This document shows positions 2,774-43,548 of a stretch of 64,000 nt of DNA, piece after piece. The first letter of the stretch is position 1, and each line of letters starts with the position of its first letter. The DNA lies in assembly GCF_000315625.1 (NCBI RefSeq), contig NW_005434608.1:1-64000 (forward strand), written 5' to 3'. The stretch comes from Guillardia theta CCMP2712 (taxonomy: Eukaryota > Protista > Cryptophyta). The position numbers were made by a program, and so were the translations under genes. The notes under the pieces are model-generated. The model was not told the origin of the DNA and did not search any database. It was given only the letters and a program-made list of their open reading frames with translations.

Positions 2774-3326
2774 GTAGTAGTAGTAGTTGAGTTTATTAGA
2801 ATGCTAGGTAGTTTGCATGGTTTGTTATCACCTTGCACTATTCTAGTCTAACAGGGATCTCGTGACCTGGCAGTTCGGCCCGACTTGGCTGGCCCTTATG
2901 GCAGCCGTGCTTCTGCTCTGCTCCCTCCTCTGCTATACTTCAGTGGTCTTCCCCGGCCTCAGCCAGTGGAGTTTCCTCCGCCGGCCTTGGTCTGGGTCGT
3001 CCGTGCTTTCAACTTGTGTTGCTTCCTCGGCTCCGACACCCCTTGACGGTCTCGGCCGGCCTTCGGCCAGTGAGTGGATGAAGGATGGGTTGGTAGGTGG
3101 AATGCGTATGGGTCCCTGGGACTCACGTCCCTTCCCCGGGGCCTCGGTCCGGACCGGGCCCGAGAGCCCGGCCGGCCTCCGCCCGGCCTCCTCCTCCCGG
3201 CCCCCCTCCCCCTCTCCCACCGGCTTACCTGCCCTTACCTTCGTTGCTTGCCCCATGTCCACCTCATTTATTTCTTCCTCCTTCCCCCCATGGGGCCAAC
3301 AGCTCCGCTCCGCCTCTTGTCCACCT

Positions 3327-28580: not shown

Positions 28581-31153
28581 ATGGCTGGAAGGGGAATGGT
28601 GGGGCTGCAGGGATGGCGGGAAAGAAGGATGGTGCAATGGCTGAGAGAGACATGCTCCTCGCATGCTGCGAGCTTGCAAGCAGTGAGCGGAATACAAAGA
28701 CAGGTAAGAAGAGCAAGACCTACCTCCCTAGGCCGGACGGGAAGCTGCGCCATGCAGATTCTTCACAAGTCGGAGGCATTCAGGCATGGACGCGGAATGG
28801 ACGGTGCTCAGACTAATCGCAGGATAGTCACGAAGCCTCAAGTGAAAACAGGGTTGTTTGGGATCAAGGGGCTTGAGAGGCCGGATGACTTTCCTAAGAA
28901 GGCAAAAGAGGCAGCAACGAAGATTGTCAGTCTGCGAGACCAAGTGATCGAAAGTTCTTCTCAGATTCCAGCAAAGCAGATCCTGACCCTGATGGATGAG
29001 ATCTCTGACTCGCTCTGTCTGGTGATCGATGCAGCCGAGCTCTGTCGCAGCGTTCATGAACACTCCGCGTGGAAGGAGGGAGCGGTCGAGGCGTACGAGA
29101 TCCTTGGAGACCTCATCTCGGAGCTGAACTCTGACGAGAAGTTGTACCGAGCTCTAGATTCTTGCGTTTCCAACATGGGAGCAGACGGACGAGCGTTTGA
29201 CGAGGAAGACGTGCGAATGGCGTGGTCGTTGCGAGAAGAGTTCGAGCGAGGAGGGGTGCACTTGGACAGAGCTGGCAGGCAGGAGATGATCGAGTTACAA
29301 GGAAGAGCCTCTGCTTTGCTCTACCAGTTTACGTGCAATCAATTCGACGAGGCTGATCCTCAAGTCTCTTTCCCAGCGCCTCTCTCTGACGCCTTGCCCG
29401 TCTGGATGAAAGGAAGTCAGACCAGCGATGGGCGCACTGTGATCAGTCTGAATCAAGATACCCTCCAGGGTATCCTGCAAGTCGTCCCAGACGAAGACTT
29501 GAGGAGGGAGGCGTATATCAGCTACCATCGGCAGGAACTCAGAGTTCGAGCTCTGGAGGAATTGTTGCTTGTCCGTCACGCCATCGCAAGGAAGATGAAG
29601 TTTAGCTCTTTCGCCGACTATGCCATCTCCGGCAAGATGGCTGCGTCACCCAAGGTAGTTGAAGACTTTCTGAATCATCTCAGCGAGCAACTGAAGCATA
29701 GAGCTCAACAAGAAATTGAGACCTTGAAGAAGCAGAAGCAGCATTACCTGGGCCTGCAGAGCGACAGCAGCCCTGAAATCTTTCCCTGGGATTTTCCGTT
29801 TTACTCCCGGCATTGTCGAAACCCAGAGCATGAGCTCGCTTGCAAGTTGATCAGAAATTTCCTACCGCTTGGTCGTGTCCTGCAAGGCATCGGGAAGCTT
29901 TTGGAAAACACCTTTGGAATCTGCATGCGAGAAGCAGAGTTAAGCGAGGGCGAGGGCTGGTCACGTGAAGTGAAGAAGTTGGAGCTGACGCTGTCGGGCA
30001 CTCTCAGTGACGAGCAGGTGCTCAAATTTCCGACGGATGATCGCGGTCTGCTTGGCATCCTCTACCTCGACCTGATCAAGAGGCCCGCAAAGCTTGGAGG
30101 TGCCGCTCATTTCACCATTCAGTGCGGAAGGCTGATGGAGGATGGGCATTACCGGCCCCCTGTGCTCGCTTTAGTCGGCAACTTCAGTCCCCCGGCGCAT
30201 TCGCAAGAGCCTTTGCTTAGCTTCGGAGAGCTGGAGATGCTGCTGCACGAATTTGGGCATGCGCTTCATTCAATCGTAGGAAGAACGAGATATCAGGTAC
30301 CGATGGCGGATGCCGGAAGAGATTTTGACTGTCAATCCTCAACAGCATCTCAACGGTACAAGAATATCGATGGATGTGGTTGAAATTCCTTCTAGTCTGA
30401 TGGAGGTCTCATTAGAGCCTCATGTCTCGTTGCCTGATCCTTGTCTCCCAGTACTTTGCCAGGGACCCGGACTTTATTCAATCTTTCGCAAAACATAACA
30501 TCACTGGTGAAAGTATTCCCAAACATATTTTAGACTGCGTTCTTCAGGAAAACAGCCGATTTTCTGTTTTAGAGACTGTTCAGCAGATCATCTATGCCCT
30601 GGTTGACCTTCATCTTCACACCCACAACAATGAGGTTGGTAATACACGGATGGACACAAGCGGCTGGTCTCGCAAGGTGGCGTACGAGGCGACAGGAGAG
30701 AAACGGTACATCCGTTACATCGAGGACTGCGACTGGCACGCCAGTCTATCTCATCTAGGCATGTACGGGTCAAACTACTACAGTTACTTATGGTGTAAGG
30801 TGCGCCCCTTCTGGTCTTCTTGTCCTTCCTCCTGTGGTTGTTCTGCTTTCAGACTGGATTGCATATCAGGTGATCGCTTCCTTCATCTGGAAGCACGTCT
30901 TCGAGCGCAACAAGTCTCAGCCGCTGGCTGGGCTCCCTCTTATCCTCAAATTTCTCAGGTGCTGCTTGAACCTCCGCTTCCTCCACCTCCTCATCTTCTC
31001 TCCAGCCACGGCGGTTCCAAGGACCCCAATGAGATGATAGGAGAACTCTTGGAGGACGTGCTGCACCGCAAGGTAGACGCCCCACTAGCAGAGGTTGAGA
31101 TCATCTTGATCTTTTCTGCAGAAAACGTCATGCCAGCCCATTCTACAAGATGA
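28581..31153 (+). CDS. MIPEP: Mitochondrial intermediate peptidase (M3A metallopeptidase)
   Basis: Arg-rich presequence; TGLFG..L..P..F; D.ISD.LC.VID.AE; K.GGAAHFTIQCG; zinc motif HEFGH; D.VEIPS.LME; HL..YGSNYYSYLW. Confidence 0.92.
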
Positions 31154-31224
31154 AAACGATGTGAAGCTGCTCTGCAGTGCTTTCTTACATGATCTGAAAT
31201 CCGTCGAAGACTAGACACAAGTAC

Positions 31225-34200
31225 TTAACCTTTTCCTTCGCCTGTGAATGTCGATGAATACGAGAGAGAGAAAGGGGGGGACAGAGGGAGGGAGGGAGGG
31301 AGGGAGGGAGGGAGGGAGGGAGGGAGGGAGGGAGGGAGGGAGAAGTCAAAGGCATCACCAAAGTCGTCCTCCTCATCCTCCTCGTCGAGGTCCTCGTCGT
31401 TGTCCTCAGCCACATCCGAAGTGAAGGCATCCTTGTATCGGTCGTTCTTCTTAATGTTGTAAGTGTCTAGTCCTGAAAGCTCCTGGTTCTCCAAGGCCTC
31501 GAAGAAAGTAGGATTGCCTTCTTTGATCTCTTCAACGCTTTCTCTCCCAATCCTGCGCGGAATCAGAAACGCTTTTACCATGAGATGAGACCTCTTCAAG
31601 ACGAGATGATACAAGGCTGGTCCAAAACTCCTCGAAATGATTTCAAACGAGAGATATATGATGAAAGAGATGTAGAAGAAAAATGACGGCGCCTTCGAAA
31701 ACTTGGTGACAAACATGGTTCCAAGGCCGCTCATCACATCCTCAACAAAGATCTTCTTGAAGATCGAAGGCAGCCCGAGGGCCGTGATGTCATCAGCCTC
31801 GATGTACCCGAAAAACCAGGAGCCGAACGCCAGATGAATCAGTGTTCCAACCGACATCATGTTGGTACAGAAGACAGCCAACTTCTCGTCGTACTGCGCC
31901 GGTTTCTTCACTGCCCTCAGGATGGCGATCTTATCGCACCAGTAGGCAGTCACGAAGAAGACAATGCCGAAGAAGTAAAGGGTGGGTATGGACGAGGCGT
32001 AAGTGAAGATGACAAACATGATGTTGAGCATGGAGCCATATCGCTTCGAGAGCAAGTACTCCGGGCCCTCATACAGCCGATTGAGCTCACGTTGAGTCAG
32101 CTTCCTCTCCTTCAGCAGCTGCTGCATCATCTGTGCTGGGGTCAGGACTAGTAAACAAGAACAGAGATGTCAAAAACAGCGAAACCAAAGACATAGAAAC
32201 CAAGCTCTTAGCCTCTTATCCTCTTAGCTTCATCTTACCACTGCCTGCGGCCATTTCGCTAATGTTGTCAAATTTGGCGTGAAAGACGCAGTGACTGTTT
32301 GCATGAAAACCTTTTCTCCGACAAGAGCATACCAATCGCTGTTTGTGTCTTTCATTGTTCCAGGCAAGCTTTGCAGTAGGTTCGTGATCCCCAGAGTCTT
32401 CTGCAGCTGAGGATTGACAACTGAACTCCACTCGCCGTTGACCAGCATAACAAGCAAAGCTGCGTCAGACACGTCATTTGACATCAAGTCACGGAACAAA
32501 GTATAACCTGTATTCACGTATTGTGCAATGAAAATGAATTTTGCGATCCTGGTTTCCAACCCGGATATTGTATGGGGCTTTGTGAAGGCCGCAAGAGTGT
32601 TGAGGATTCTCTCGAGAAGCTGATTGATAGCCAAGATGGTAACGACGGCTACGATGGACATAATCTGAATCAGCCTTTCGTTGTTGACGTAAGCTTGGCA
32701 GAACTCAGGCTGTGAAGGAAGCATGTTCCCATACTGGGGAGCACAGTAACACATCAGATAAGCTTGGTATATCTGGTTGGATTGCGAGTACCTGTATATT
32801 TGCTCAGACTGATCCTAGTTTACACCTTGTGCATTACCTGCTCCACATGATTTGTTCTTGAACATTCGGATCGTCAATTTTGGGACCATTCAGACACACC
32901 AGGTTTCCTCCTGCAACTTGAAGTTGACTTTGCTGGATTTGGACAAACAGGATGATGAGCAGCGATCCTATCAGGAGGCTGACGGTGATGGCATTTGCAA
33001 TCATGTTTCGCCCAATTGAATCAAGGCCGCGGTGCTGCAGGTTTTCCCAGAGGACGTTCGAAGGCTCCGGAGCTCGCTTCACCCTCAGATGATACTTATT
33101 GCGGAACTTCTTCACTTTGGAGTTTGGAAAGAATCTACTCAACAGTCCAGCTGTATACGCTTGAACACAATCTGTCTGGCCCTTGTCCTCGTTGAAGGTG
33201 ACAAAAGCGCAGATGGATTTGAAGTCTGACTTGGCTCGCAGCTTTATGATCTGCTCATCGAGATATCGCTGCCTGCAAACCTACCAGTTATTCGCTCTCA
33301 CACAAAGCAACTCTCACCTTTTCTTCATCTTCTTCAGTTTCTTTTGTAGAGGCTGCAATTTGTATCTGGGATCAAAGGTGTCAAATTTACAACAAGGCAC
33401 AAAGCGAAGGTGTAATTTACAGCTTCAACTTAGCGGTCTGAACTTCTATAGCGAAATCGTTTTGACCTCGCCTTTGGAATAAGTCTATCAGACGTCCGTT
33501 GTTCAGACCGATGGCTACGTCAGCGACTTCGCCATATCTCGAGAAAAATGCACGAAACTCTTCTGGGTCAGTGGCGTCTGTTGGAATATTTTCGACGAGA
33601 ATAGTATAGTCAGCAGCTGAGATAGTTTCATCGTCAAGAAGCTTAATGTTCCTGTCTTGAGACATCTTGAGAAACCAAGTTGCTCCTATCAAGATTACAG
33701 TGATAGCCAGATCGATACATGCCAAGATCAAGCTCAGAGTCTTCAATCGAATAGCAAAGCAAGCTCCAAAAATACAAAGCGGTGGTGAGGGAAGAGTTGG
33801 ATACTGTTGAGACCATCCGGTTCCTATGTTGCCAAGACTAGTACGGATCTGTTGAGGGACATCATTCCGGTTCGAGTACTCTTTGCCCCAGCTGTTTCCA
33901 ATCAATGAAGGAATGCAGATGAAAGCCATCACGGTCGAGACCACAGTCATGTATCGGAGGTATGAGAAGTACAGCCCTACACCTGTTCCTAATTGCCCCA
34001 AATCGATGGTGGAAGTCTTCCAGAGTGGGTAGAGTTGGACGTTATTCTTTCTAACTTGGTTTCTGTTCTGTTCTAACATGGCAGTCTTAAGGCTTGGTTT
34101 TTGCCATTCCCCGCCAGTATCATGAACGTACTTGGCGTTCTTCTTCAAGTACCTTTGGCGCTGCAGGGCGACGTAGAGCACAAAGACGATGACCGAGACT

Positions 34201-37200
34201 GAGATGGCGACGTTCTGCCTCAGAAGTTTCTGTGCACTGATGGGCGTGACATACTCAACGACAAAGCAGCTGTTCGGGTCACAGCTCTGCAGAGTCTTAG
34301 CCGAGTCGATCCCGTTCATTGCCACTGACATCTGGCACGACCCTGTGGTCTCATGAAACTGACCAGGGACGCTCGGAGGTTTGCAAAGCACCCGACTGGT
34401 CGCCTCGAAATAATGAGAACCGAAGACTGTGAACGTCTGTGACACTGGCGGTGGAGATTTGCACGGCAAGTCGTTGCAGAGCGCCTTGTAGGTGCACTTG
34501 AACAAGGAGGAGTTCCTGAAGTACTGTCCCGATACAGTGACCACTGCATTTGCGCCGTTGGCTGCGTTCCATTTTCCGTTCTGAAATTGAGGAACACTCT
34601 GAGCTGGCTCAAAGGTGGACTCGCGATAGAAGGTGAAGGTATTCTTCAACTCAGAGTTCTGATTGTACTCAACGGACGTGAAATCACCGATGCAGCCGCA
34701 CCTCTCAAAGCTGCTCGTACAAGGCTGGCAGGGATTTGTAAGCTTTCCCACAGAGTTCCTGAGGCAACATATTGCATTTAGTGAAACCTGAATCTCCGTG
34801 GAGTAGTACATGTCCTCTGACCTTTGACTCCTTGTCACTTTGCTGCCGTCAGCCTCGTACTGTTGACAGAACGGGCCTTCGGGGCAGCCACAAGTGGAGC
34901 ATTGGTTGGTGAATGGACACGAGATCCACTTGCTGCAGCCCGTCCAGGAGGGGTCAAGGCTCGAGCTCCCGTCGCAGTAGGTCGATGGAGTGCACAGGTT
35001 GGCGATAGACGGGCTGACGCATTTGACAAGAGAGTCGTTGAGAAACACTCCCTGCACGTCCATCACGATTGACGGATCGTTGACACCCACAAACCTGCAG
35101 GCGGGTTGACTTGGCAGCTGAAAGAAACCACTTCCATTGACAAACACCACAGTTTCACCCTTGGAAGGGCCCGAGAAAGGAAAGATGGAGTAGACCTTGG
35201 GGTTCTCATAGAAAAGAAAGAGAACGCTGTAGTCCTTGCCGAGACTGGGAGAAGTAAAGTCCACCTCGTTGAGAGAGACGGCAACATCCACGTAGCCAGC
35301 AAAGAGACTTGCCGGCGTCGTACAGATGACAGCTGTGTCTAGCATCACCACAGCCTCCACCACTGATCGACCGAACTTGCACTTAGGTGTGCGAATCGGA
35401 TCACTGAAGGCACCAAAGCCCGAGCCCGTCACGGTGACTCGCGTGCCCCCGTTGAGAGGACCTCCCGTCGGCTGCACCTTCAAGACCTTGGGATGTTGGT
35501 AGTAGATGAACTGCTCAGAAAGCAGCGATCGGAACAGCTGATTGCTCCTTCCCCAGTCTGTGACAGGCTGACCTTCGTACCAATTGGTGTAATGAGGAAC
35601 AATCTTGTTTTGAAAGATCCAGTTGGGCTCATCCCAGGGAAAGTAGGTCATGTCGCATCGGATGTTCTTGGAGGGGTCATTGGGTGCCGAGGGGTCAGGT
35701 TTGCTGTCAGAAGGAGAGATACAGAAGTTCCTGCTGCCCGCCGGCTCGTACGTCTGATTGTTGAGAGCGATCGAGATGCCGATTCCTCTCGTGTATTTAC
35801 CCGTTAGCTTCCCGTTGGTCTTCCAGGTGACTCTCTGAGCATTGGTGAGAGGGATTGCAGAGTAAGCAGAAGGAGACATGGCGACAATCTCACTGTCGGA
35901 TATGATTCCTCCTTGTGTTTCCACCTTGATGTCATCAATCGCCCAGTTATCATAGTCTCCTTGACCATGTAGCGCTTGCTTGAACATGATCCTCGTCTTC
36001 TGATTCCGACACGGCTTGGACCAAGGACATTGCAGCAATGGTTTCGTTGATCCAGAGCCAAATGAATTTTTGCGGACATATCGAACACCGCGACTATTCT
36101 GAAACAACTTGTGAGACACAAAAGTGAATGACTCGTACTCCTTGGTGTTGAAGACAGCCACTCGATTCCAATTCTGGATTTGGCTCCACTCAGGAGGTGA
36201 ATCGATAGGCGCGTATTTGATTTGGACGGTAAGCTGGACAGGAGCAGAAGTGAGGGCATCAGGTAAGAAACAGTTGAGAGCCCTGATCTTGTCCTGACTG
36301 GCAAAATTGAAGGGTGCGACAGTGCAGTTGACATGCTCTTGAACGGAGCACTCGCACTGGTTGGGGCATGGAGGCAGTTGGCAAGAAGTTGAGCTCACGC
36401 AATGACATTCCTGCATGAAAACAACTCGGGATCCTTTAGTAAAGGTCTGCGTGGGTGCCGTGAAGACTTCAAGCGGGATAATCATTTGGGACATTGTTGA
36501 AGGCTGCTTGTCCAGCGCTGGAATGCCTATTCGCACAAACTTGTAATCGCTTATGTAGTCAAATGACATCATGAAGTCTCTTTGAGAAGAATCAACCATC
36601 ATGGAAAGTTCACACTGAGGAACCACGTACTGGAGATAGGTTATATTCTTTGACAACAATGAATATTGGAGTGTGACTTGTGACTTGTAGGCATTAGGAA
36701 CCGTCAGATTGCTAACATTGTATGCAGAACAGACTGAAATATTGATGACGGGAACTGCACTACAAGAGTCACACTGCACATTCGCATGAAACCTCCCTGA
36801 TTCAGAAATTTGCAGCAAGGTAAGGTCGTCTGCAACGTCTGGAGCCTCGCAAGATAGCGGAGAGGTCTGATTTCCCCTTTTCACCCAGAAAGAAATGCCG
36901 TATCCCCGTGACAAGTCCATCTCCTTGGACACGATGTACCGCCCAGCAAGTGGAATCAGGTTAGAGCCAGTGAAGTAGAGGGATCTGCTCTGAACAGGCG
37001 CAGGTAACACCGTGGTCTGCCCGGGTAGGTAGGCGACATCTACCTTAAGCCGAGAGTTCTCAAGATCCATACCTTGACATTTCGAATTTGAAGCTACCGA
37101 TGTGCTGAAATCCCACATGGTTTCGTCATAAGAGTAAGGGCTAGTCTTCAAGAACCAGTCATTCTCCAGCACAGAAGCTTTTTGAGAGATTTGATCGTTT

Positions 37201-40200
37201 GGAATGCTAAAGGGAGAGACGGATGCAGGGCTCGGATCGAAATCATCCCACAACGAAGTGCCGCCCTTGTACTCTTCGGGGAAAGTTCGGTAGTTGCCCC
37301 ACTGAACCCGCAGGTCTCCGTTGTTGTACCGATTGAAACCCTTCCCTCGAAAGGTCACCAGCGTTCCTCCATCTGCAGGGCCCCCAAGGGGACTAAAGGT
37401 AGAGAATTCAGGTTGAAGGTAATACCTGAAAGAAACATTGCTCGTTAGAGTGAAATCTTGACCATTAAGAGCAATTTCCACCCACACATCGTAAATACAG
37501 TACAAGCAGTTTTTCTCAAATGTAATCTTTGGCCAAGGAGTGTAACACTTAATCAGTCTGTCCCCTAAGACTGTTGCTGTGGTAACCAAATCCTGAAACT
37601 TGCATAAAGGATTTCCAGCATAATTCAGAAAGCCAATTCCAAAAATCTCAACGGTCGTGGGTTGCTTATGAGCTGAATCTGCTGTTTCATAACGGATGAG
37701 CGGACCTCCAGCAGGCATTAGAGAGAAAATGTTAGGATCCAAGTAGAAAGAAAACAAGTTGTTTGTAGATTCCGTGTAGTCCTGTCCGTTAAGTGTGATT
37801 GTCAAATCGATTGTTTGACCAAAAATTTCAATCGTTTGAATGGTTGGCATTCCAAATCTTTTGGTCAAGTACTCTAGCAAGACTCCATTCCGCACTGACT
37901 CGATGATTTTCAAAGAGTCTTCCACATTTGCATCGGTGACATTTCCGTACACGCAATGCACACAGAAAGCAACATCAATGCTACCAATGTTCGGTGCTGT
38001 ATTCGGGGTCTCACGGACGAATTGAATGACAACGTCACTAGGTAACACCAGGATATCTCCATAGACGTTTCTAGTTCCTACGACTTCAGCTATGGCAAGC
38101 TTGAAAGCTTGAGTGCGAGCGAATGTATTGAAGGAACACAGCTGGGCATCGCACATGGCAGGATCATTCGGATACTGAATACAACGAGAAGTGCAGCTCA
38201 CCTCCGAGCCTGAAAGCGTCACGACGATGAACGGAGGGGTTTGACAAACTATTTCATTGTCTCTTTGCTCCGCACTGACTGGAAGGTAAGCTGCCCTGGT
38301 CCATATAGTTGTTCGAGCACCGAATCTACATCTCATATCCTCACTGAAAACTTGAAACCCTCTTCCAAAGACTTTGATTTCTGCGTTTCCACGAAGAGGG
38401 GATCCAGCAGGAAGTATAGATAAGAGGACAGGCTGAGAGTAGTAGACATACGGACAACCATTCAGTCTTGTGATGTTACCAACTGTGTATGGCACAAGTG
38501 CGGGTATTTGTTTGGCTGTAGTTCTGAAATCTGACCATATCACGTTTCGTCCTTCAGAGCTGTTGTAACAGAATCCTTGCTCTAAATTATAGTCTTGACC
38601 ATTCAGAGTGACTGAGAAGGGTAAATTTGCTTCCACTTTGTTCGGAGGAGACTTGCAGATGATCATACTACCGGAAGCAACCGTTGCTTGAGATGTCCAG
38701 TTGGTGAGGGGAAGATAGCGCGCATACAGATCACTGTACTGACGCTCCATTCCAAAACGGCACAATACGTCTCCATTGAAAGCAGCAAAGCCCTCGCCAA
38801 AAACGGTCACAACTGTCCCTCCTTTCAAAGATCCCCCAGAAGGTTTCAATCTGTGAATGGACGGTTGAACATACAACAGATAATTCAAACTAGCAACATC
38901 TGTGAAGTCTCGTGCATTTAGAGATACATCGACTTTCACAGCATGAGCTTGATTGCTAGGAGCTTGACAACGTAAAAGTGTGCTTGATAAATATGACGCA
39001 AAAACCGCATACCGGCTCAGATCTGACGTAAGATGAAGACTTCCATAGTATGGAGATGATGTTTTCACTGACTCCAGGGAAACAGTCTCATTGCCAAATC
39101 GACAGGTAATGCTTGATTGATTGAACACTCGATTTGATGCTTGCAGAAGAGATGGAGCAAGGTATACTGGAGGGTTAAAACCTGTTTCATTGATGAACCA
39201 ATTTGTGTTTGGCGAATCAATCTCATTATACAGGTTGAATCCGATTCCTCGAATGATAATCTCGGTGCCTCCCAGTGTTGGACCTCCCAAGGGATAAGAG
39301 GACAGCAGAATTGGTTCTGGATAGAAGAAAAATTGCTTTCCTACAGAGCTGAGCCTTGTCAAAGGTGGTGGACTCCTCGGCCAATCACTGTAAGGGAAAT
39401 CAATGTAGTCTTGAGCATTGAAAGTCACAGTGAAAGGCATGGGAAGTCCTCCGCTACCGCTTATATTGGCAGCAATGATGTTGTCATCGTAGGTTGAAAG
39501 GTTTCCATCCTTTCCGGGAAAGGACGCACCAAGAATGGTTGGGTGAATCGCTTTCCGTCTCTGCTCCCAATCTCTTATTGCATTGTCTATCTCAGTTTGA
39601 AGCTGCGCAATGGCAGCAAGAGTCGCGCTAGATGGCAATATGCTCTGTGCTTGCACTAACACCGCTTGTTGCTGCTTCAACGTAGCAATATGATTTATCA
39701 TCTGCTGATTCTCATAGATATCTATTTTGCGAGGAGCATCGTAAGGGATGGTGGGAATGGGGCAAACAAGAAGAGTGTCGTTCACTATCCATGCTGAAGT
39801 ATTTGTCTGAAAAGAATAGCTTATCCAGCCTGGAAATGTCGTACTGTTTCCAACAGAAACAACAGTCTGTTTTCCAAATTGACACATGGGAAACCACTGA
39901 AACTGTTGGAAACCTTTTCCATACACAAAGACGTACTTTCTTGAGTTCAAAGGACCACCATTTGGAGTGAGGTGTGATACTATTGGTTGCCTGTAGTATC
40001 TGTAGTATAATGCTCCGGAAGCAGGCAACGAGCAATCCACATCCAGACAGGAAGGGTAGACATCTTGTCCATTCAGTTTCAATCTGAAAGTGGCATCGTA
40101 CAGAGAAGAATCCAATTGAGGGGTATGAGGAGGTGCTGAACATCGCAGAGTGAAATCGTCTACCCTTTCTGCTCTGCTCTCACATGCCTCGATGCATGAA

Positions 40201-43200
40201 ATAACCACTTGTGTGGTGGTATTGAAACCTCGAAAGCTTGGAGTGTACGGCTTAGAATATGATGGAAGAAAATTCATGATTCCAGTCTCTCTGTTGTATG
40301 TTGGACACCCTGTAGAGTTGTATGCAAGAGCGCATAAAAAAATTGTCCCAAAGTGTATGATGTCAAACACGTGTGCTGGGTATGGCTGGTCGAAAGCAAA
40401 GACATTTTCACTGACGAACCTTCCATTTAATGGTAATGAATGCCTGGCATTGCCCGTTGTACATTTTGGGCCGATACTGTTAGCATAATCACTATATTGA
40501 CATCCCCACACACAGATAGAAAGCCCCTCAATTGCTGGGCGGAAGCCAGAACCTCGTACTTCAACAGTTGTACCACCAGCAAAAGGGCCTCCATATTGTA
40601 AATTGATTCCTTGCGACGGCGAAAATGACGTGAGATTCGTGAGAAAACGTGGAGCAGAAAGTGAAGAAAGGCTTGGATTCTCATAGTACTGAAAGGTCGA
40701 CGTAATATCACCGTAATCAGCGCCGTTCAGGCTTACTCTTACGTTCACATTTCCAATGACTAGGGGGCAATCTGTACATCGATCCTGCCTGTTTGCTCTG
40801 TTGGTGGGATTTATTGACGCCCGTACAATGCCCTTAATGCAGGTGGTACTGGTATCAAAAAGCCCAGCGCATTGACATTGTAGATCAAATCCGGGAGGGC
40901 AAAGGTTCACACAAGCTCCATCGTAAGGTAAAATGCCACTATTTGATGGACCGGAGGGAGGAGACACTGTTGTGATCAGCGTGCTCGTGATGATACATCC
41001 ACGCATCCAGTTATTTCCAGAATCACCAAACCGAACTCTGACATCATTGGCTGTTTTGATGTCGAAGCCGTAGCCAACCAGTAAGATGTAACTTCCTCCT
41101 GTTATTGGTCCAAATTGTGGAACAACTTTTAGAACTGCTGGTAAACTGACATACTTGAAAGTAAATATTTTTTGTGTTGGGAGCATTAGTTTTTGTTTCC
41201 ACCAAATTGTAAGATTCCGAGGAGTACTCAGCTTATCAAGATTATTTTGCATTGCTGCCAAATCTACCTTTCCATTGCTGCTGTATATCTGGACGTCTGG
41301 TGTCATGCAAATAAGCCTTACACTGCTGTATCGAGTTGCAGGCATTCGGAGTACTTGTATTGAAGCATTCATCAAACTTCCAGGGTACTGACTGTAATGA
41401 GTTCCATTAGAGTACACACTGAGACGACATTCCAAATTCCCAAGAAAGGTATTAAAGCCTTGTCCGATCACGTAGAGAGGGGTACCTCCATTTACTGGCC
41501 CTGTATCAGGCGAGTAATCTAGAATGTAAAACCCCTCGTCTTTGCTGCGGGTGATGGTGTGGCTGCTGCCGCTTGCAACGCTCGTTGTGTTCTTCCCATA
41601 CAGAGAGACGAGTAAGTGCGGGCTAGTTATTAAATGGCCCCATAAGTCCGGGGAACCAATGCCAATCTGTCCGAAAGTATTCAAACCCCACGCGTAAACA
41701 TTCAAATCTTTGCTGATGACATAAGAGGTGTAATCTCCTGCGAAAACTCTGATTCCAATGTTGCTGATGGGCATCAGCGGCTCACAATCAGCGGACGTGT
41801 ACCCAACCGTTTGGTTTGCAGGGCCACAATCTCGGCGTTGAAGAGTGTCAGTGCATCTGCGGCCGCAGGGAGTTCGAACCTTACTTCCAACGCAAACATA
41901 GTCGGCAAAACTGGGTGAGACTTCTGATCCAAAAGGGGTATCACACCATATACGATTTGGAATCGGGACGAATGAGATTGAAGATCTGTCGATCGAATTG
42001 CCAACACCGAGCTGACCTGCGTCATTACGACCAGAGCTAAATACATGTCCAGAAGAGTTCAAAAACAGAGAATGCCCATGCCCTGCCGCTATCGAGATGA
42101 CAGGCCCCAGCATTTGGAATTCCTTTCCTTGCAGCTTTACAGGAGCAAACCGATTCAACTTGTCACCAAGCCCAAGTTGTCCATGCCTATTTCCGCCCCA
42201 GATCCAGATTTCACCGTCCTTTGAAAGAGCAATGCTGTGCAACCAACCAGCAGCGACCTGTACAATGAACTGGTCCTTCAGTCCTGGCACGAGAATAGCT
42301 TCCAGCGATCTCCTCGGCTCAACAGAATTGGGACCGATATCCAAAGAGTCCTGACCAAGTTGTCCAGATGAGCCAGAACCTACCGAAAAAGATCAAGATA
42401 GGAAGCAAGTATGCTATCTTTACCCCAGACATATACTTTTCCCAAGGACGTAACGGCCATGCTATGTTCTCCCCCAGCAGAAACTTGGAAGAATAAAAGA
42501 TCCTTTGAGTTTTTTGTTGGGGTAGGCTGGAATCTATCCGCTGTGTCCCCTGTGCCAAGTTGTCCCATATGATTGATTCCCCAAGCAAACAAAATTCCAC
42601 TCCGCGAGAGAGCAAGCGTATGGTGATTGCTATGAGAAGGATGTTTCAGGAAAGGAAAAGGCAAATCAATCAGGGAAAACGTACGATGAAGAGATTTGTA
42701 TGATTTCTTGCCCAAAAAGGTCATTTATTTCGGCAGGAAATCTGAATTTTTGATGATCAGGGCACAGCTTTGCACAAATGTGAATAGAATTACGTAAGTT
42801 TCACAGATTTCTCGACGGAGCAAGGCGGATAGGTGCATAGATTGATTCCTGCATCAGTCAATCCCAATTGCCCCCGGTAATTTCTACCCCAAGACCACAA
42901 TCTTCCTTTTAGAGAGGATGAAACGGAAAACTCTTCGCCTGCTGCAACCGCGCTCATGTTTTGATTCCTCAGTACCTTCAAAACTTCAGATCTCGTGTTA
43001 CTGGAAAATGCAGAACATTCACCGGGACGATCATTGGAATGACCGTATTGTTGAGGGAACCTGTACCTTCGTGGGGATCTCAATCAAGAAATGAGTAGAA
43101 AGGGTCTTACCAAGTTGACCAAAGTTATTTGATCCGAATCCGTACACATCGCCTTCATTGATGGTTAACGTTGAAAAGGGATTTCCGTATCTGCATATAG

Positions 43201-43548
43201 CTTCAATGGAACGTGATGAAGAAAACTGAATTACAATAGAATCTCATCGCTACTGAGGTTGTGCATTCCGATGTCGACATATGCCCCAGTAGACAGTAAA
43301 TTGCGTCTAGTGCTCAAATTGAAAGCCCAATCGTTGCTTTCGAAATCAGTCTGCCACAAAGATATGTGAATACCATTTACAAACTTGCGAAAACATCGCA
43401 GACAAGGATGTGATACCTCTATCTCCTGGGATCTCATGGCATGTAATCTTCGATTGTAATGTGAAGTCCTCTCTTCATTTGTAGAGCACACACCACCAAA
43501 AATGCTCAACGAAAACAAAAGAAACAAGAATTCCGTAGGCGCTTTCAT
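31225..43548 (-). CDS. Giant membrane protein: signal peptide, RCC1 repeats, about 12 IPT/TIG domains, reelin-like domain and OSCA/TMEM63/TMC-like (anoctamin superfamily) channel
   Basis: RCC1 motifs (VAAGWLHSIALSKDGEIWIWGGNRHGQLGLGD); repeated P..GP..GGT.V.V.G.GF; a 2975-codon open frame leading into TM VAISVSVIVFVLYVAL, then LGTGVGLYFSYLR and ADYTILVENIP; downstream exons APEPSNVLWENL and YEGPEYLLSKRY...YWCDKIAILR. Confidence 0.85.
31284..31341. repeat. (GGGA)n microsatellite
   Basis: Tetranucleotide run between the convergent 3' ends of MIPEP and the channel gene. Confidence 0.9.

What the first reader, a model, noticed from the sequence alone, without database searches (positions are those of the whole stretch)
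31225..43548. Giant receptor-channel fusion: RCC1 propeller and IPT/TIG stalk attached to an OSCA/TMEM63/TMC-like pore
Seen: signal peptide, RCC1 repeats and about 12 IPT/TIG repeats. In the same uninterrupted frame follow a TM with basic cytosolic flank (~34161-34212), a TMC-like GTGVGLYFSYLR (~33960-33990) and an OSCA-like ADYTILVENIP (~33580-33620). Later exons give APEPSNVLWENL and the C-terminal TM bundle. The fusion point lies within one exon, so it is not a gene-model artefact. Known: OSCA/TMEM63 and TMC are mechanosensitive channels, normally under about 1000 aa, and OSCA has an extracellular N-terminus before TM0; IPT arrays form the stalks of fibrocystin and plexins. Inference: a >3500-aa channel with its own extracellular tether and ligand-binding head, conceptually like polycystin-1 but on a different pore family, and possibly a flagellar or surface mechano/contact sensor.
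Basis: partly seen in the sequence, partly recalled or inferred. Interest (0 to 1): 0.88.

Follow-up and report, generated by a model that had tools for sequence, protein, structure and literature searches.

The report
Giant surface receptor fused to OSCA-like channel
A cryptophyte alga makes one 3,875-residue protein in which a huge extracellular propeller-and-stalk is joined to a membrane module with the fold of the OSCA/TMEM63 force-sensing ion channels; the same design occurs in uncultured marine and freshwater eukaryotes, and I found no description of it in the papers searched.

Summary
Window 31225-43548 (minus strand) is one expressed gene of 13 exons and 3,875 aa. It encodes a signal peptide, a 7-blade RCC1 propeller, about 12 IPT/TIG domains with a Reelin-B-like insert, a stop-transfer helix (TM0) with a basic cytosolic flank, and a 10-TM module carrying the RRM-like PHM7_cyt domain.

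Spliced transcript contigs from three studies join the last TIG domains to the C-terminal TM bundle. All introns are GT..AG. One 10.9-kb contig spans from the channel exons into the ectodomain, and its length matches the exon model up to the start codon, so this is not a gene-model artefact.

A confident AlphaFold model (pLDDT 87.7) of a 52%-identical relative matches OSCA/TMEM63 best (Z 26, 572 residues) and TMEM16 less fully. By sequence the module is not a canonical OSCA. It carries the Pfam signature of the uncharacterised CSC-L1 family of the anoctamin superfamily, and the "TMC-like" motif is a general TM1 motif of this clade.

Non-fusion relatives lack TM0. The gene therefore looks like a type-I RCC1-TIG receptor fused to a 10-TM channel. 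Fusion proteins from metagenomes form one clade. The scan also noted a possible paralogue elsewhere in this genome (unchecked).

Function as a contact- or force-gated channel is inferred, not shown.

The parts
31225..43548 (-). Whole coding region, ATG to stop, 13 exons, 3,875 aa
   Evidence: Gene model built. Splice joints from transcript contigs.
43235..43548 (-). Exon 1. Signal peptide (43483-43548) plus about 80 aa of N-terminal region with no recognised domain
   Evidence: The donor GTAATT at 43234 is inferred and was not checked by reads.
43044..43190 (-). Exon 2, first RCC1 blade
   Evidence: homology to P0004, GT..AG. Inferred.
42794..43000 (-). Exon 3, RCC1 blade
   Evidence: Inferred.
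42685..42741 (-). Exon 4, RCC1 blade part
   Evidence: Inferred.
42424..42629 (-). Exon 5, RCC1 blade
   Evidence: Pfam RCC1 6e-13 and RCC1_2 2e-14. Junction read.
33421..42379 (-). Exon 6 (8,959 nt). Holds the rest of the RCC1 propeller, all TIG domains, the Reelin-B-like region, TM0, TM1, TM2 and the start of the PHM7_cyt domain. The fusion point lies inside this exon.
   Evidence: ORF. Pfam. Transcript contigs cover 33421-36900 and run on beyond it.
41630..43190 (-). RCC1-like 7-blade propeller (approx. aa 115-560), predicted extracellular
   Evidence: Pfam RCC1, RCC1_2 and WD40_RLD. Seven GQLG/GQIG motifs in the sequence. It lies between the signal peptide and TM0.
35010..41530 (-). Array of about 12 IPT/TIG domains (aa about 595-2767) with inserted regions
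   Evidence: Pfam TIG 7e-52. Iterated self-profile finds 11-12 units.
35920..36995 (-). Cys-rich region with sub-threshold Reelin subrepeat-B similarity
   Evidence: 24.3 and 20.3 bits against a cut-off of 27. The same weak hit appears in relatives P0008 and P0172.
34161..34226 (-). TM0, a stop-transfer helix followed by the basic flank RQRYLKKNAKY
   Evidence: Hydropathy scan. A helix in the model of the relative. Absent from non-fusion relatives.
33954..33989 (-). GTGVGLYFSYLR motif at the start of TM1
   Evidence: Both glycines are nearly invariant in the 60-sequence family alignment.
33038..33614 (-). Cytosolic RRM-like PHM7_cyt domain between TM2 and TM3, from ADYTILVENIP to APEPSNVLWENL. 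It is interrupted by introns 33366-33420 and 33273-33317.
   Evidence: Two partial Pfam PHM7_cyt hits of 17.4 and 18.8 bits. 47-64 bits in relatives. RRM matches in PDB.
33318..33365 (-). Exon 7 (48 nt)
   Evidence: Joints 33365/33421 and 33271/33317 in three runs.
32838..33272 (-). Exon 8: end of the cytosolic domain, TM3, and the start of the Cys-rich outer loop
   Evidence: joints. alignment.
32508..32791 (-). Exon 9: outer loop, TM4, TM5
   Evidence: intron 32460-32507 removed. Weak anoctamin-6 similarity.
32239..32459 (-). Exon 10: TM5-TM6 region
31592..32130 (-). Exon 11: TM7-TM10
   Evidence: Pfam RSN1_7TM 18.9 bits. TMEM63B alignment..
31359..31552 (-). Exon 12: cytosolic acidic C-terminal tail
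   Evidence: The tail is conserved in P0005.
31225..31241 (-). Exon 13: last 5 codons and the stop
   Evidence: Deduced from contig numbering and GT..AG ends.
31242..31358 (-). In-frame 117-nt intron containing the SLPP-coding-looking repeat
   Evidence: Contig positions skip it. GTGATG..CACAG ends. The joint itself was dropped by the tool as repeat.
31116..31188 (-). Intron in the 3' UTR. It overlaps the end of the convergent peptidase M3 ORF.
   Evidence: Joint seen in three runs..

Best explanation
Shown: this is one expressed gene for a 3,875-aa membrane protein.

Domain order, inferred from the signal peptide, the positive-inside flank and the fold of a relative:
- A cleaved signal peptide puts about 3,000 residues outside the cell: a 7-blade RCC1-like propeller at the tip, then a stalk of about 12 IPT/TIG domains with a Reelin-B-like insert.
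- A single helix (TM0) brings the chain back into the cytosol.
- A conserved roughly 60-residue linker then leads into a 10-TM module with an RRM-like cytosolic domain between TM2 and TM3.

The module has the OSCA/TMEM63-type fold. By sequence it sits in a protist-wide, functionally uncharacterised branch of the anoctamin superfamily with the signature of CSC-L1.

Origin: relatives without the ectodomain also lack TM0. The gene therefore most likely arose by fusion of a type-I RCC1-TIG surface receptor to the cytosolic N-terminus of a 10-TM channel or scramblase.

Most likely mode of action (inference): it is a surface sensor. Binding or pulling at the ectodomain (contact with particles, cells or the cell's own surface layer), and/or membrane tension, opens a cation-conducting groove in the TM3-TM7 region and gives a Ca2+/cation signal.
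For: Gene and mRNA:
- Seven joints are reported with GT..AG ends on the minus strand, each seen in contigs of three runs from three studies.
- One 3,867-nt contig links 31358 to 34453 fully spliced.
- One 10,921-nt contig runs from 32239 past 36900, and its length fits the exon model up to the ATG.
- The Hanusia phi transcript protein P0001 (83% identical) also runs from RCC1 through TIG, TM0-TM2 and into PHM7_cyt.

Fold:
- A family profile hits TMEM63B at 3e-23, TMEM63A at 5e-23, OSCA3.1 at 1e-13 and OSCA1.2 at 2e-10.
- The AlphaFold model of P0005:985-1790 (about 52% identical to the window's channel part) has pLDDT 87.7 and pTM 0.84.
- The top 34 Foldseek PDB hits are all OSCA/TMEM63, with E down to 5e-14.
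- VIA-align gives Z 26.4 over 572 residues for OSCA3.1. TMEM16 gives Z about 21-22 over 363-435 residues.

Topology:
- Signal peptides are present in the window and in P0008, P0172 and P0192.
- There is a basic flank after TM0.
- The ectodomain has 93 Cys and 35 N-x-S/T sequons.

Conservation and spread:
- Full-length relative P0004 is 49% identical over 3,070 aa.
- The same RCC1 + TIG + PHM7_cyt order occurs in P0008, P0172, P0192, P0193 and P0194.
- The channel parts of the fusions form one clade, SH-aLRT 98.
- TM0 is absent from 43 of 45 complete non-fusion relatives.
Against: - No functional, localisation or proteomic data exist for this protein or for any member of its closest family (CSC-L1-like).
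- The window's own RSN1_7TM hit is below Pfam's cut-off (18.9 against 28.7 bits), and no RSN1_TM hit was found.
- The structure model is of a 52%-identical relative, not of the window's protein.
- OSCA/TMEM63 and TMEM16 proteins can be lipid scramblases as well as channels (PMC11534332, abstract, seen). The transported species is therefore open.
- Force transmission through TM0 is speculative. Known OSCA/TMEM63 gating is by membrane tension, without a tether.
- The Hanusia transcript ends at the first downstream intron (retained intron, immediate stop), so truncated isoforms cannot be excluded.
- Exons 1-5 are not read-verified.
Confidence: 0.6

Rival explanations
1. Adhesion or surface-matrix receptor whose membrane module is a lipid scramblase, or a regulator of membrane properties, rather than an ion channel. 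Engagement of the ectodomain would locally remodel the membrane, for example during secretion, surface-plate assembly or ejectosome docking.
For: - The closest relatives repeatedly hit Pfam Anoctamin as well as RSN1_7TM.
- The family profile hits the anoctamin-6 scramblase in TM4-TM5.
- TMEM16 scramblases are structural neighbours at Z about 21-22.
- TMEM63B is reported as a mechanosensitive scramblase (PMC13332465 abstract), and OSCA/TMEM63 can be made to scramble (PMC11534332 abstract).
Against: - The cytosolic RRM-like domain and the TM7-TM8 hairpin align with TMEM63B rather than TMEM16.
- OSCA/TMEM63 matches cover more of the model, 510-570 residues against 363-435.
- No Ca2+-site analysis was done.
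Confidence: 0.2
2. Mainly a structural or adhesive surface protein. The 10-TM module serves only as a membrane anchor or an inactive relic, with no transport function.
For: - Most of the mass is ectodomain.
- Many giant TIG-rich surface proteins without any channel exist in algae and stramenopiles.
- The RSN1_7TM score is weak.
Against: - The TM module is as well conserved as the ectodomain: 49-53% identity to P0004/P0005, with long near-identical blocks in the linker, the RRM-like domain and the APEPSNVLWENL motif.
- It has kept the full fold in a clade that has diverged to about 35-38% identity.
- A single helix would suffice as an anchor.
Confidence: 0.1
3. Gene-model artefact: two adjacent genes (a TIG receptor and a channel) read together.
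For: - The Hanusia phi protein P0001 stops exactly at the end of the big exon.
- No annotated full-length protein of this genome appeared in the protein searches.
Against: - TM0, TM1, TM2 and the start of PHM7_cyt are in the same exon as the TIG domains.
- Spliced contigs in three studies bridge all downstream introns.
- Uninterrupted 2,700-4,070-aa ORFs with the same order are found on metagenome contigs.
- The Hanusia stop is the TAA inside the retained GTAA donor.
Confidence: 0.02

Closest known systems
OSCA/TMEM63 (CSC family, TC 1.A.17.5) mechanically activated channels
   Same: - Best structural match: Z 22-26 over 510-570 residues.
- Profile E 3e-23 to TMEM63B.
- RRM-like PHM7_cyt domain between TM2 and TM3.
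- AP-x-P-x-x-x-W-x-NL motif before TM3.
- TM7-TM8 hairpin alignable to TMEM63B.
- 11 TM in total with the N-terminus outside.
   Different: - No RSN1_TM match was found, and RSN1_7TM is below the cut-off in the window and its close relatives.
- TM0 did not superpose on OSCA's TM0 (model ranges start at residue 48 or later), and TM0 is absent from the nearest non-fusion relatives.
- It carries a roughly 3,000-aa ectodomain. From the structures and family sizes seen here and from my own knowledge, OSCA/TMEM63 proteins are about 700-850 aa with only a short N-terminus.
CSC-L1 family (TC 1.A.17.3) of the anoctamin superfamily (Medrano-Soto et al. 2018, PMC5868767)
   Same: - Same Pfam signature: PHM7_cyt plus overlapping RSN1_7TM/Anoctamin matches, and no RSN1_TM match found.
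- Wide protist distribution (compared with Table 1 of the paper).
- Function unknown.
   Different: - The paper gives an average size of 903 aa. It only remarks that some members are much larger and may be fusions. It does not mention TIG, RCC1 or Guillardia.
- I could not compare directly with TCDB sequences.
Polycystin-1 (PKD1) and PKD1-like proteins
   Same: Same concept: a very large modular ectodomain on the same polypeptide as a multi-pass channel-like C-terminal part. This rests on my own knowledge and was not tested here.
   Different: - Unrelated pore family: TRP-like in PKD1, anoctamin/OSCA superfamily here.
- Different ectodomain modules.
- No GAIN/GPS or PLAT domain was seen among the Pfam hits.
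Fibrocystin/PKHD1, plexins and Met-family receptors (IPT/TIG stalks)
   Same: A run of IPT/TIG domains forming an extracellular stalk, followed by a single membrane helix. There is a weak TIG_plexin hit. Many algal and stramenopile giant TIG proteins are the nearest ectodomain relatives.
   Different: Those proteins end in a short tail or a kinase/GAP domain, not a 10-TM module. An N-terminal RCC1 propeller replaces the sema or PA14-type heads (the latter point is from my own knowledge).
TMC1/2 with the protocadherin-15/cadherin-23 tip link
   Same: A member of the same superfamily coupled to a long extracellular filament (own knowledge). This is the working analogy for tether gating.
   Different: In hair cells the tether and the channel are separate proteins. 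No TMC Pfam match was found here.

Membership tests
OSCA/TMEM63 (CSC, Pfam trio RSN1_TM + PHM7_cyt + RSN1_7TM) | N-terminal RSN1_TM domain (TM0-TM2), PF13967 | tested here: not met
   No PF13967 hit at E<=0.01 in the window's exon 6, nor in P0001, P0002-P0005 or P0008. No hit at E<=0.001 in P0172.
OSCA/TMEM63 (CSC, Pfam trio RSN1_TM + PHM7_cyt + RSN1_7TM) | Cytosolic PHM7_cyt (RRM-like) domain between TM2 and TM3 | tested here: met
   In the window the domain is split by introns into two partial hits of 17.4 and 18.8 bits. The intact domain scores 47.5-63.6 bits (cut-off 27) in P0004, P0002, P0003, P0005, P0006, P0008 and P0011. The model shows a beta-alpha domain with two long helices.
OSCA/TMEM63 (CSC, Pfam trio RSN1_TM + PHM7_cyt + RSN1_7TM) | RSN1_7TM domain at Pfam gathering score | tested here: not met
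   18.9 bits in the window exon and 17.8-24.2 bits in close relatives, against a cut-off of 28.7. Only more distant clade members pass: P0013 at 38.3 and P0057 at 31.6.
OSCA/TMEM63 (CSC, Pfam trio RSN1_TM + PHM7_cyt + RSN1_7TM) | OSCA/TMEM63 three-dimensional fold | tested here: met
   Tested on the model of relative P0005. The top 34 Foldseek hits are OSCA/TMEM63. VIA-align gives Z 26.4 over 572 residues, rmsd 4.5. It was not tested on the window's own spliced sequence.
OSCA/TMEM63 (CSC, Pfam trio RSN1_TM + PHM7_cyt + RSN1_7TM) | Mechanically activated cation conductance | not testable with these tools
   Needs electrophysiology.
CSC-L1 (TC 1.A.17.3) | PHM7_cyt plus overlapping RSN1_7TM and Anoctamin matches, without RSN1_TM (as described in PMC5868767) | tested here: met
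   The pattern is seen in P0013, P0076, P0172 and P0011, and in atlas clusters. It was compared with the paper's description.
CSC-L1 (TC 1.A.17.3) | Clustering with TCDB 1.A.17.3 reference sequences in a tree | not testable with these tools
TMEM16/anoctamin | Anoctamin domain at gathering score, and no RRM-like TM2-TM3 insert | tested here: not met
   No Anoctamin hit in the window pieces. PHM7_cyt is present. TMEM16 structures align over fewer residues. The Ca2+-site residues were not examined.
TMC | TMC domain (Pfam TMC) | tested here: not met
   No TMC family hit in any Pfam scan of the window pieces or relatives. No TMC chain among the 50 best Foldseek matches or the 50 best VIA-align matches shown.

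The most novel reading that the evidence does not exclude
A naturally tethered member of the OSCA/TMEM16/TMC superfamily. A single polypeptide carries both the extracellular filament (RCC1 head on an IPT/TIG stalk) and the pore. Pulling or ligand contact at the head is passed through TM0 and the conserved TM0-TM1 linker to the cytosolic domain, and gates the pore. In cryptophytes this could be the contact or shear sensor that triggers escape responses. If true, it would be an independent, one-chain solution to the tether-gating problem, which hair cells solve with TMC plus tip links.
Probability: 0.25. Interest if true: 0.85.

Novelty: new variant of a known kind. Interest (0 to 1): 0.64.

Why it matters
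OSCA/TMEM63 channels are thought to be gated by membrane tension alone. In the same superfamily, TMC channels need separate tether proteins.

A conserved, expressed protein that joins a 3,000-residue extracellular head-and-stalk to an OSCA-fold module offers three things:
- A natural test case for tether gating against lipid gating.
- A handle on the function of the large, wholly uncharacterised CSC-L1-like protist family.
- A candidate surface sensor for contact, shear or prey and particles in ecologically important flagellate algae and uncultured plankton.

It also shows how a 10-TM channel with a cytosolic N-terminus can acquire an ectodomain by adding one helix.

Tried and rejected
1. The first AlphaFold run, with an 8-row alignment, gave pLDDT 42.9 and was discarded. 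The 60-row alignment fixed it.
2. Single-exon phmmer searches against PDB gave only marginal hits: TMEM63B at 0.041, anoctamin-6 at 0.99 and RRM proteins. They are not usable alone.
3. Assigning a taxon to the metagenome relatives failed. Atlas look-ups of neighbouring genes and a protein search with the neighbouring kinesin gave no named close relatives. Cluster look-ups gave no organism names. tblastx showed no synteny with the window.
4. An exhaustive intron search for the 5' exons gave too many solutions. It was replaced by junction-by-junction choice.
5. Literature searches for this architecture found nothing relevant.
6. My first 3' model missed three in-frame introns. It was corrected.
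7. Strand evidence from the raw RNA run X19 was too thin (22 reads, library strandedness unknown). The transcript direction rests on the GT..AG polarity instead.
8. A gene-model artefact and a TMC affinity were considered and rejected (see rival explanations and membership tests).
Full report
**What is in the sequence**

The interval holds a 2,975-codon open frame on the minus strand (42344-33417), flanked by shorter frames. Pfam finds the following:
- In the big frame: RCC1 repeats (4e-31), IPT/TIG (7e-52, seven stretches), a sub-threshold Reelin-subrepeat-B match, and the first third of PHM7_cyt, the cytosolic domain of OSCA/TMEM63-type proteins.
- In the downstream frames: the last part of PHM7_cyt and a sub-threshold RSN1_7TM match.
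- In the upstream frames: further RCC1 blades.

**Gene model and expression**

Homology to a full-length relative (P0004) and GT..AG sites gave a first model.

I then laid public runs on 31000-36900. Contigs from three runs of three studies lack seven segments, each bounded by GT..AG on the minus strand:
- 33366-33420
- 33273-33317
- 32792-32837
- 32460-32507
- 32131-32238
- 31553-31591
- 31116-31188 (3' UTR)

The contig numbering also implies removal of 31242-31358, which has GT..AG ends. The tool dropped that joint as repeat.

Contigs without introns can only come from spliced RNA. Two of them matter most:
- One 3,867-nt contig links 31358 to 34453, that is, the C-terminal TM bundle to TM0 and the last TIG domain.
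- One 10,921-nt contig runs from 32239 past 36900.

My exon model from 32239 to the ATG at 43548 sums to 10,878 nt. That leaves 43 nt for a 5' UTR. This supports exons 1-5, which were otherwise only inferred.

The final model has 13 exons and 3,875 aa. Three of the introns are in frame and read like coding sequence. The SLPP repeat that appears in the raw translation is intronic.

The only raw RNA run gave 22 reads. It adds nothing on strand.

**Architecture (numbering of the model)**
- Signal peptide, residues 1-22.
- About 90 residues with no recognised domain.
- Seven RCC1 blades, about 115-560.
- Eleven to twelve TIG-like domains between 595 and 2767, with a Cys-rich Reelin-B-like region.
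- TM0 at 3029-3050, followed by RQRYLKKNAKY.
- A roughly 60-residue linker that is highly conserved within the fusion clade.
- TM1, beginning GTGVGLYFSYLR, then TM2.
- The RRM-like domain, from ADYTILVENIP to APEPSNVLWENL.
- TM3, a Cys-containing outer loop, TM4 to TM10, and an acidic tail.

The ectodomain has 93 Cys and 35 N-x-S/T sequons. The signal peptide, the positive-inside flank and these features place the RCC1-TIG part outside the cell. This placement is inference.

**Organism**

The nearest protein is a Hanusia phi transcript product: 83% identical overall and 94% in the TM0-PHM7 stretch. The window therefore comes from a close cryptophyte relative, probably Guillardia theta. That is my inference; the source is not stated.

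The Hanusia protein ends exactly where exon 6 ends. The stop there is the TAA inside the GTAA donor, and the same transcript also carries an unspliced upstream intron. It is an incompletely spliced transcript, not evidence for a shorter gene. A truncated isoform cannot be excluded, however.

**What the membrane module is**

Single exons give only marginal PDB sequence hits.

I searched 1.84 billion representative proteins with a profile of the channel part. It returned 6,281 relatives at E<=1e-3 and 789 at E<=1e-30.

A 60-sequence profile gives these PDB hits:

| Target | E-value |
|---|---|
| TMEM63B | 3e-23 |
| TMEM63A | 5e-23 |
| OSCA3.1 | 1e-13 |
| OSCA1.2 | 2e-10 |
| Anoctamin-6 (TM4-TM5 only) | 2e-5 |

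With that alignment, AlphaFold models the channel part of P0005 at pLDDT 87.7 and pTM 0.84. P0005 is about 52% identical to the window's channel part.
- Foldseek's first 34 PDB hits are all OSCA/TMEM63.
- VIA-align gives Z 26.4 over 572 residues for OSCA3.1 and Z 22-25 for the other OSCA/TMEM63 entries.
- TMEM16 entries reach Z about 21-22 over only 363-435 residues.

The fold is OSCA/TMEM63-like.

**Family placement**

The module is not a canonical OSCA.
- No RSN1_TM match was found, and RSN1_7TM is below the gathering score in the window and its close relatives.
- The wider clade shows PHM7_cyt together with overlapping RSN1_7TM and Anoctamin matches.
- It is spread over ciliates, green algae, diatoms, oomycetes and apicomplexans.

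This is the signature and range that Medrano-Soto et al. (PMC5868767) give for their uncharacterised CSC-L1 family. That paper notes that some members are much larger, possible fusions. It does not mention TIG, RCC1 or Guillardia.

The so-called TMC-like motif is the conserved TM1 motif of this whole clade. No TMC match was found anywhere.

**Origin of the fusion**

- Among the 45 complete-looking non-fusion relatives whose TM1 motif lies within the first 120 residues, 43 have no hydrophobic segment upstream of it. These relatives start in the cytosol, like TMEM16.
- Other enlarged relatives carry cytosolic additions such as PDZ domains (P0041).
- TM0 did not superpose on OSCA's TM0.

TM0 is thus best read as the stop-transfer helix of a type-I RCC1-TIG receptor that became fused to a 10-TM protein.

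In a maximum-likelihood tree, the channel parts of all RCC1-TIG-bearing proteins form one clade (SH-aLRT 98) nested in the non-fusion family. This is consistent with a single origin.

**Spread of the architecture**

- P0004 (4,019 aa, a cluster of 18 members, on Tara Oceans contigs) is 49% identical to the window's protein over 3,070 aa. It has RCC1, TIG, PHM7_cyt at 47.5 bits and RSN1_7TM at 22 bits.
- P0008, P0172, P0192, P0193 and P0194 (2,700-2,920 aa) share the domain order at about 35-38% identity in the channel part.
- Three of them (P0008, P0172, P0192) begin with signal peptides.
- The two fetched contigs carry intron-free genes next to kinesin, DnaJ, PDZ and OTU genes, so they are eukaryotic.
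- I could not name the organisms.
- The scan's first stage also noted a similar gene on another piece of this genome (s1-431611). I did not check it.

**Function**

Nothing here measures function. I consider a surface sensor most likely: contact or pulling at the ectodomain and/or membrane tension opens a cation path in the OSCA-like groove. The basis is fourfold:
- The OSCA/TMEM63 fold.
- The retained cytosolic domain.
- Strong conservation of the TM0-TM1 linker.
- The receptor-like ectodomain.

A scramblase role is a serious rival, given the anoctamin-like sequence signals and the reported scrambling by TMEM63B and OSCA mutants (abstracts listed). A purely structural role is unlikely because the 10-TM part is conserved as well as the ectodomain.

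**Novelty**

The parts are known kinds. The membrane module belongs to a named but uncharacterised family. The combination with a giant RCC1-TIG ectodomain was not found in the literature available to me. In the databases such proteins are unnamed or called RCC1-family proteins. I rate it a new variant of a known kind, of fairly high interest.

**Limits**

- The structure is of a relative, not of the window's protein.
- The spliced window protein could not be submitted to Pfam or AlphaFold, because no reference exists for it.
- Exons 1-5 are not read-verified.
- Statements about polycystin-1, fibrocystin, plexins and tip links rest on my own knowledge.

Noticed in passing
window 32460-32507, 31553-31591, 31242-31358: Three short introns (48, 39 and 117 nt) are in frame and free of stops, so they read as coding sequence. 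The 117-nt one holds the CT-rich repeat that translates as SLPPSLPP. Transcripts remove all three.
   Followed up: yes
window 28581-31153 (+): A convergent peptidase family M3 gene lies here, as two ORFs (Pfam 4e-55 and 6e-15). Its end overlaps the 3' UTR intron (31116-31188) of the giant gene, and transcript contigs run across both genes.
   Followed up: partly
P0001 (Hanusia phi transcript protein): The only named relative comes from an incompletely spliced transcript. It retains an in-frame upstream intron and stops at the TAA inside the retained donor of the intron after the big exon. This may be an assembly of pre-mRNA or a real truncated isoform.
   Followed up: partly
P0041 (PDZ + channel), P0076 (Pythium oligandrum, 2,442 aa), P0057, P0114: Other members of the same channel clade carry long N-terminal additions of a different, apparently cytosolic kind (PDZ domains, or long regions without Pfam hits and without a TM helix). 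The family seems prone to N-terminal fusions.
   Followed up: partly
window 36000-43000 against its flanks; L001 and L002: The giant gene is lower in G+C (0.44-0.47) than its neighbours (0.51-0.54). The same contrast is seen for the relatives on the two metagenome contigs.
   Followed up: no
another piece of the same genome (scan note s1-431611): The first stage noted a second RCC1 + about 12 TIG + Reelin-like + OSCA/TMC-type gene of about 10.8 kb. It may be a paralogue.
   Followed up: no
L003 and L004 (both from one public run): P0005 (TIG + channel, 1,825 aa) and P0190 (RCC1 + TIG, 1,765 aa) come from the same run. They look like the two halves of one further full-length homologue, 43-52% identical to the window's protein.
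   Followed up: partly
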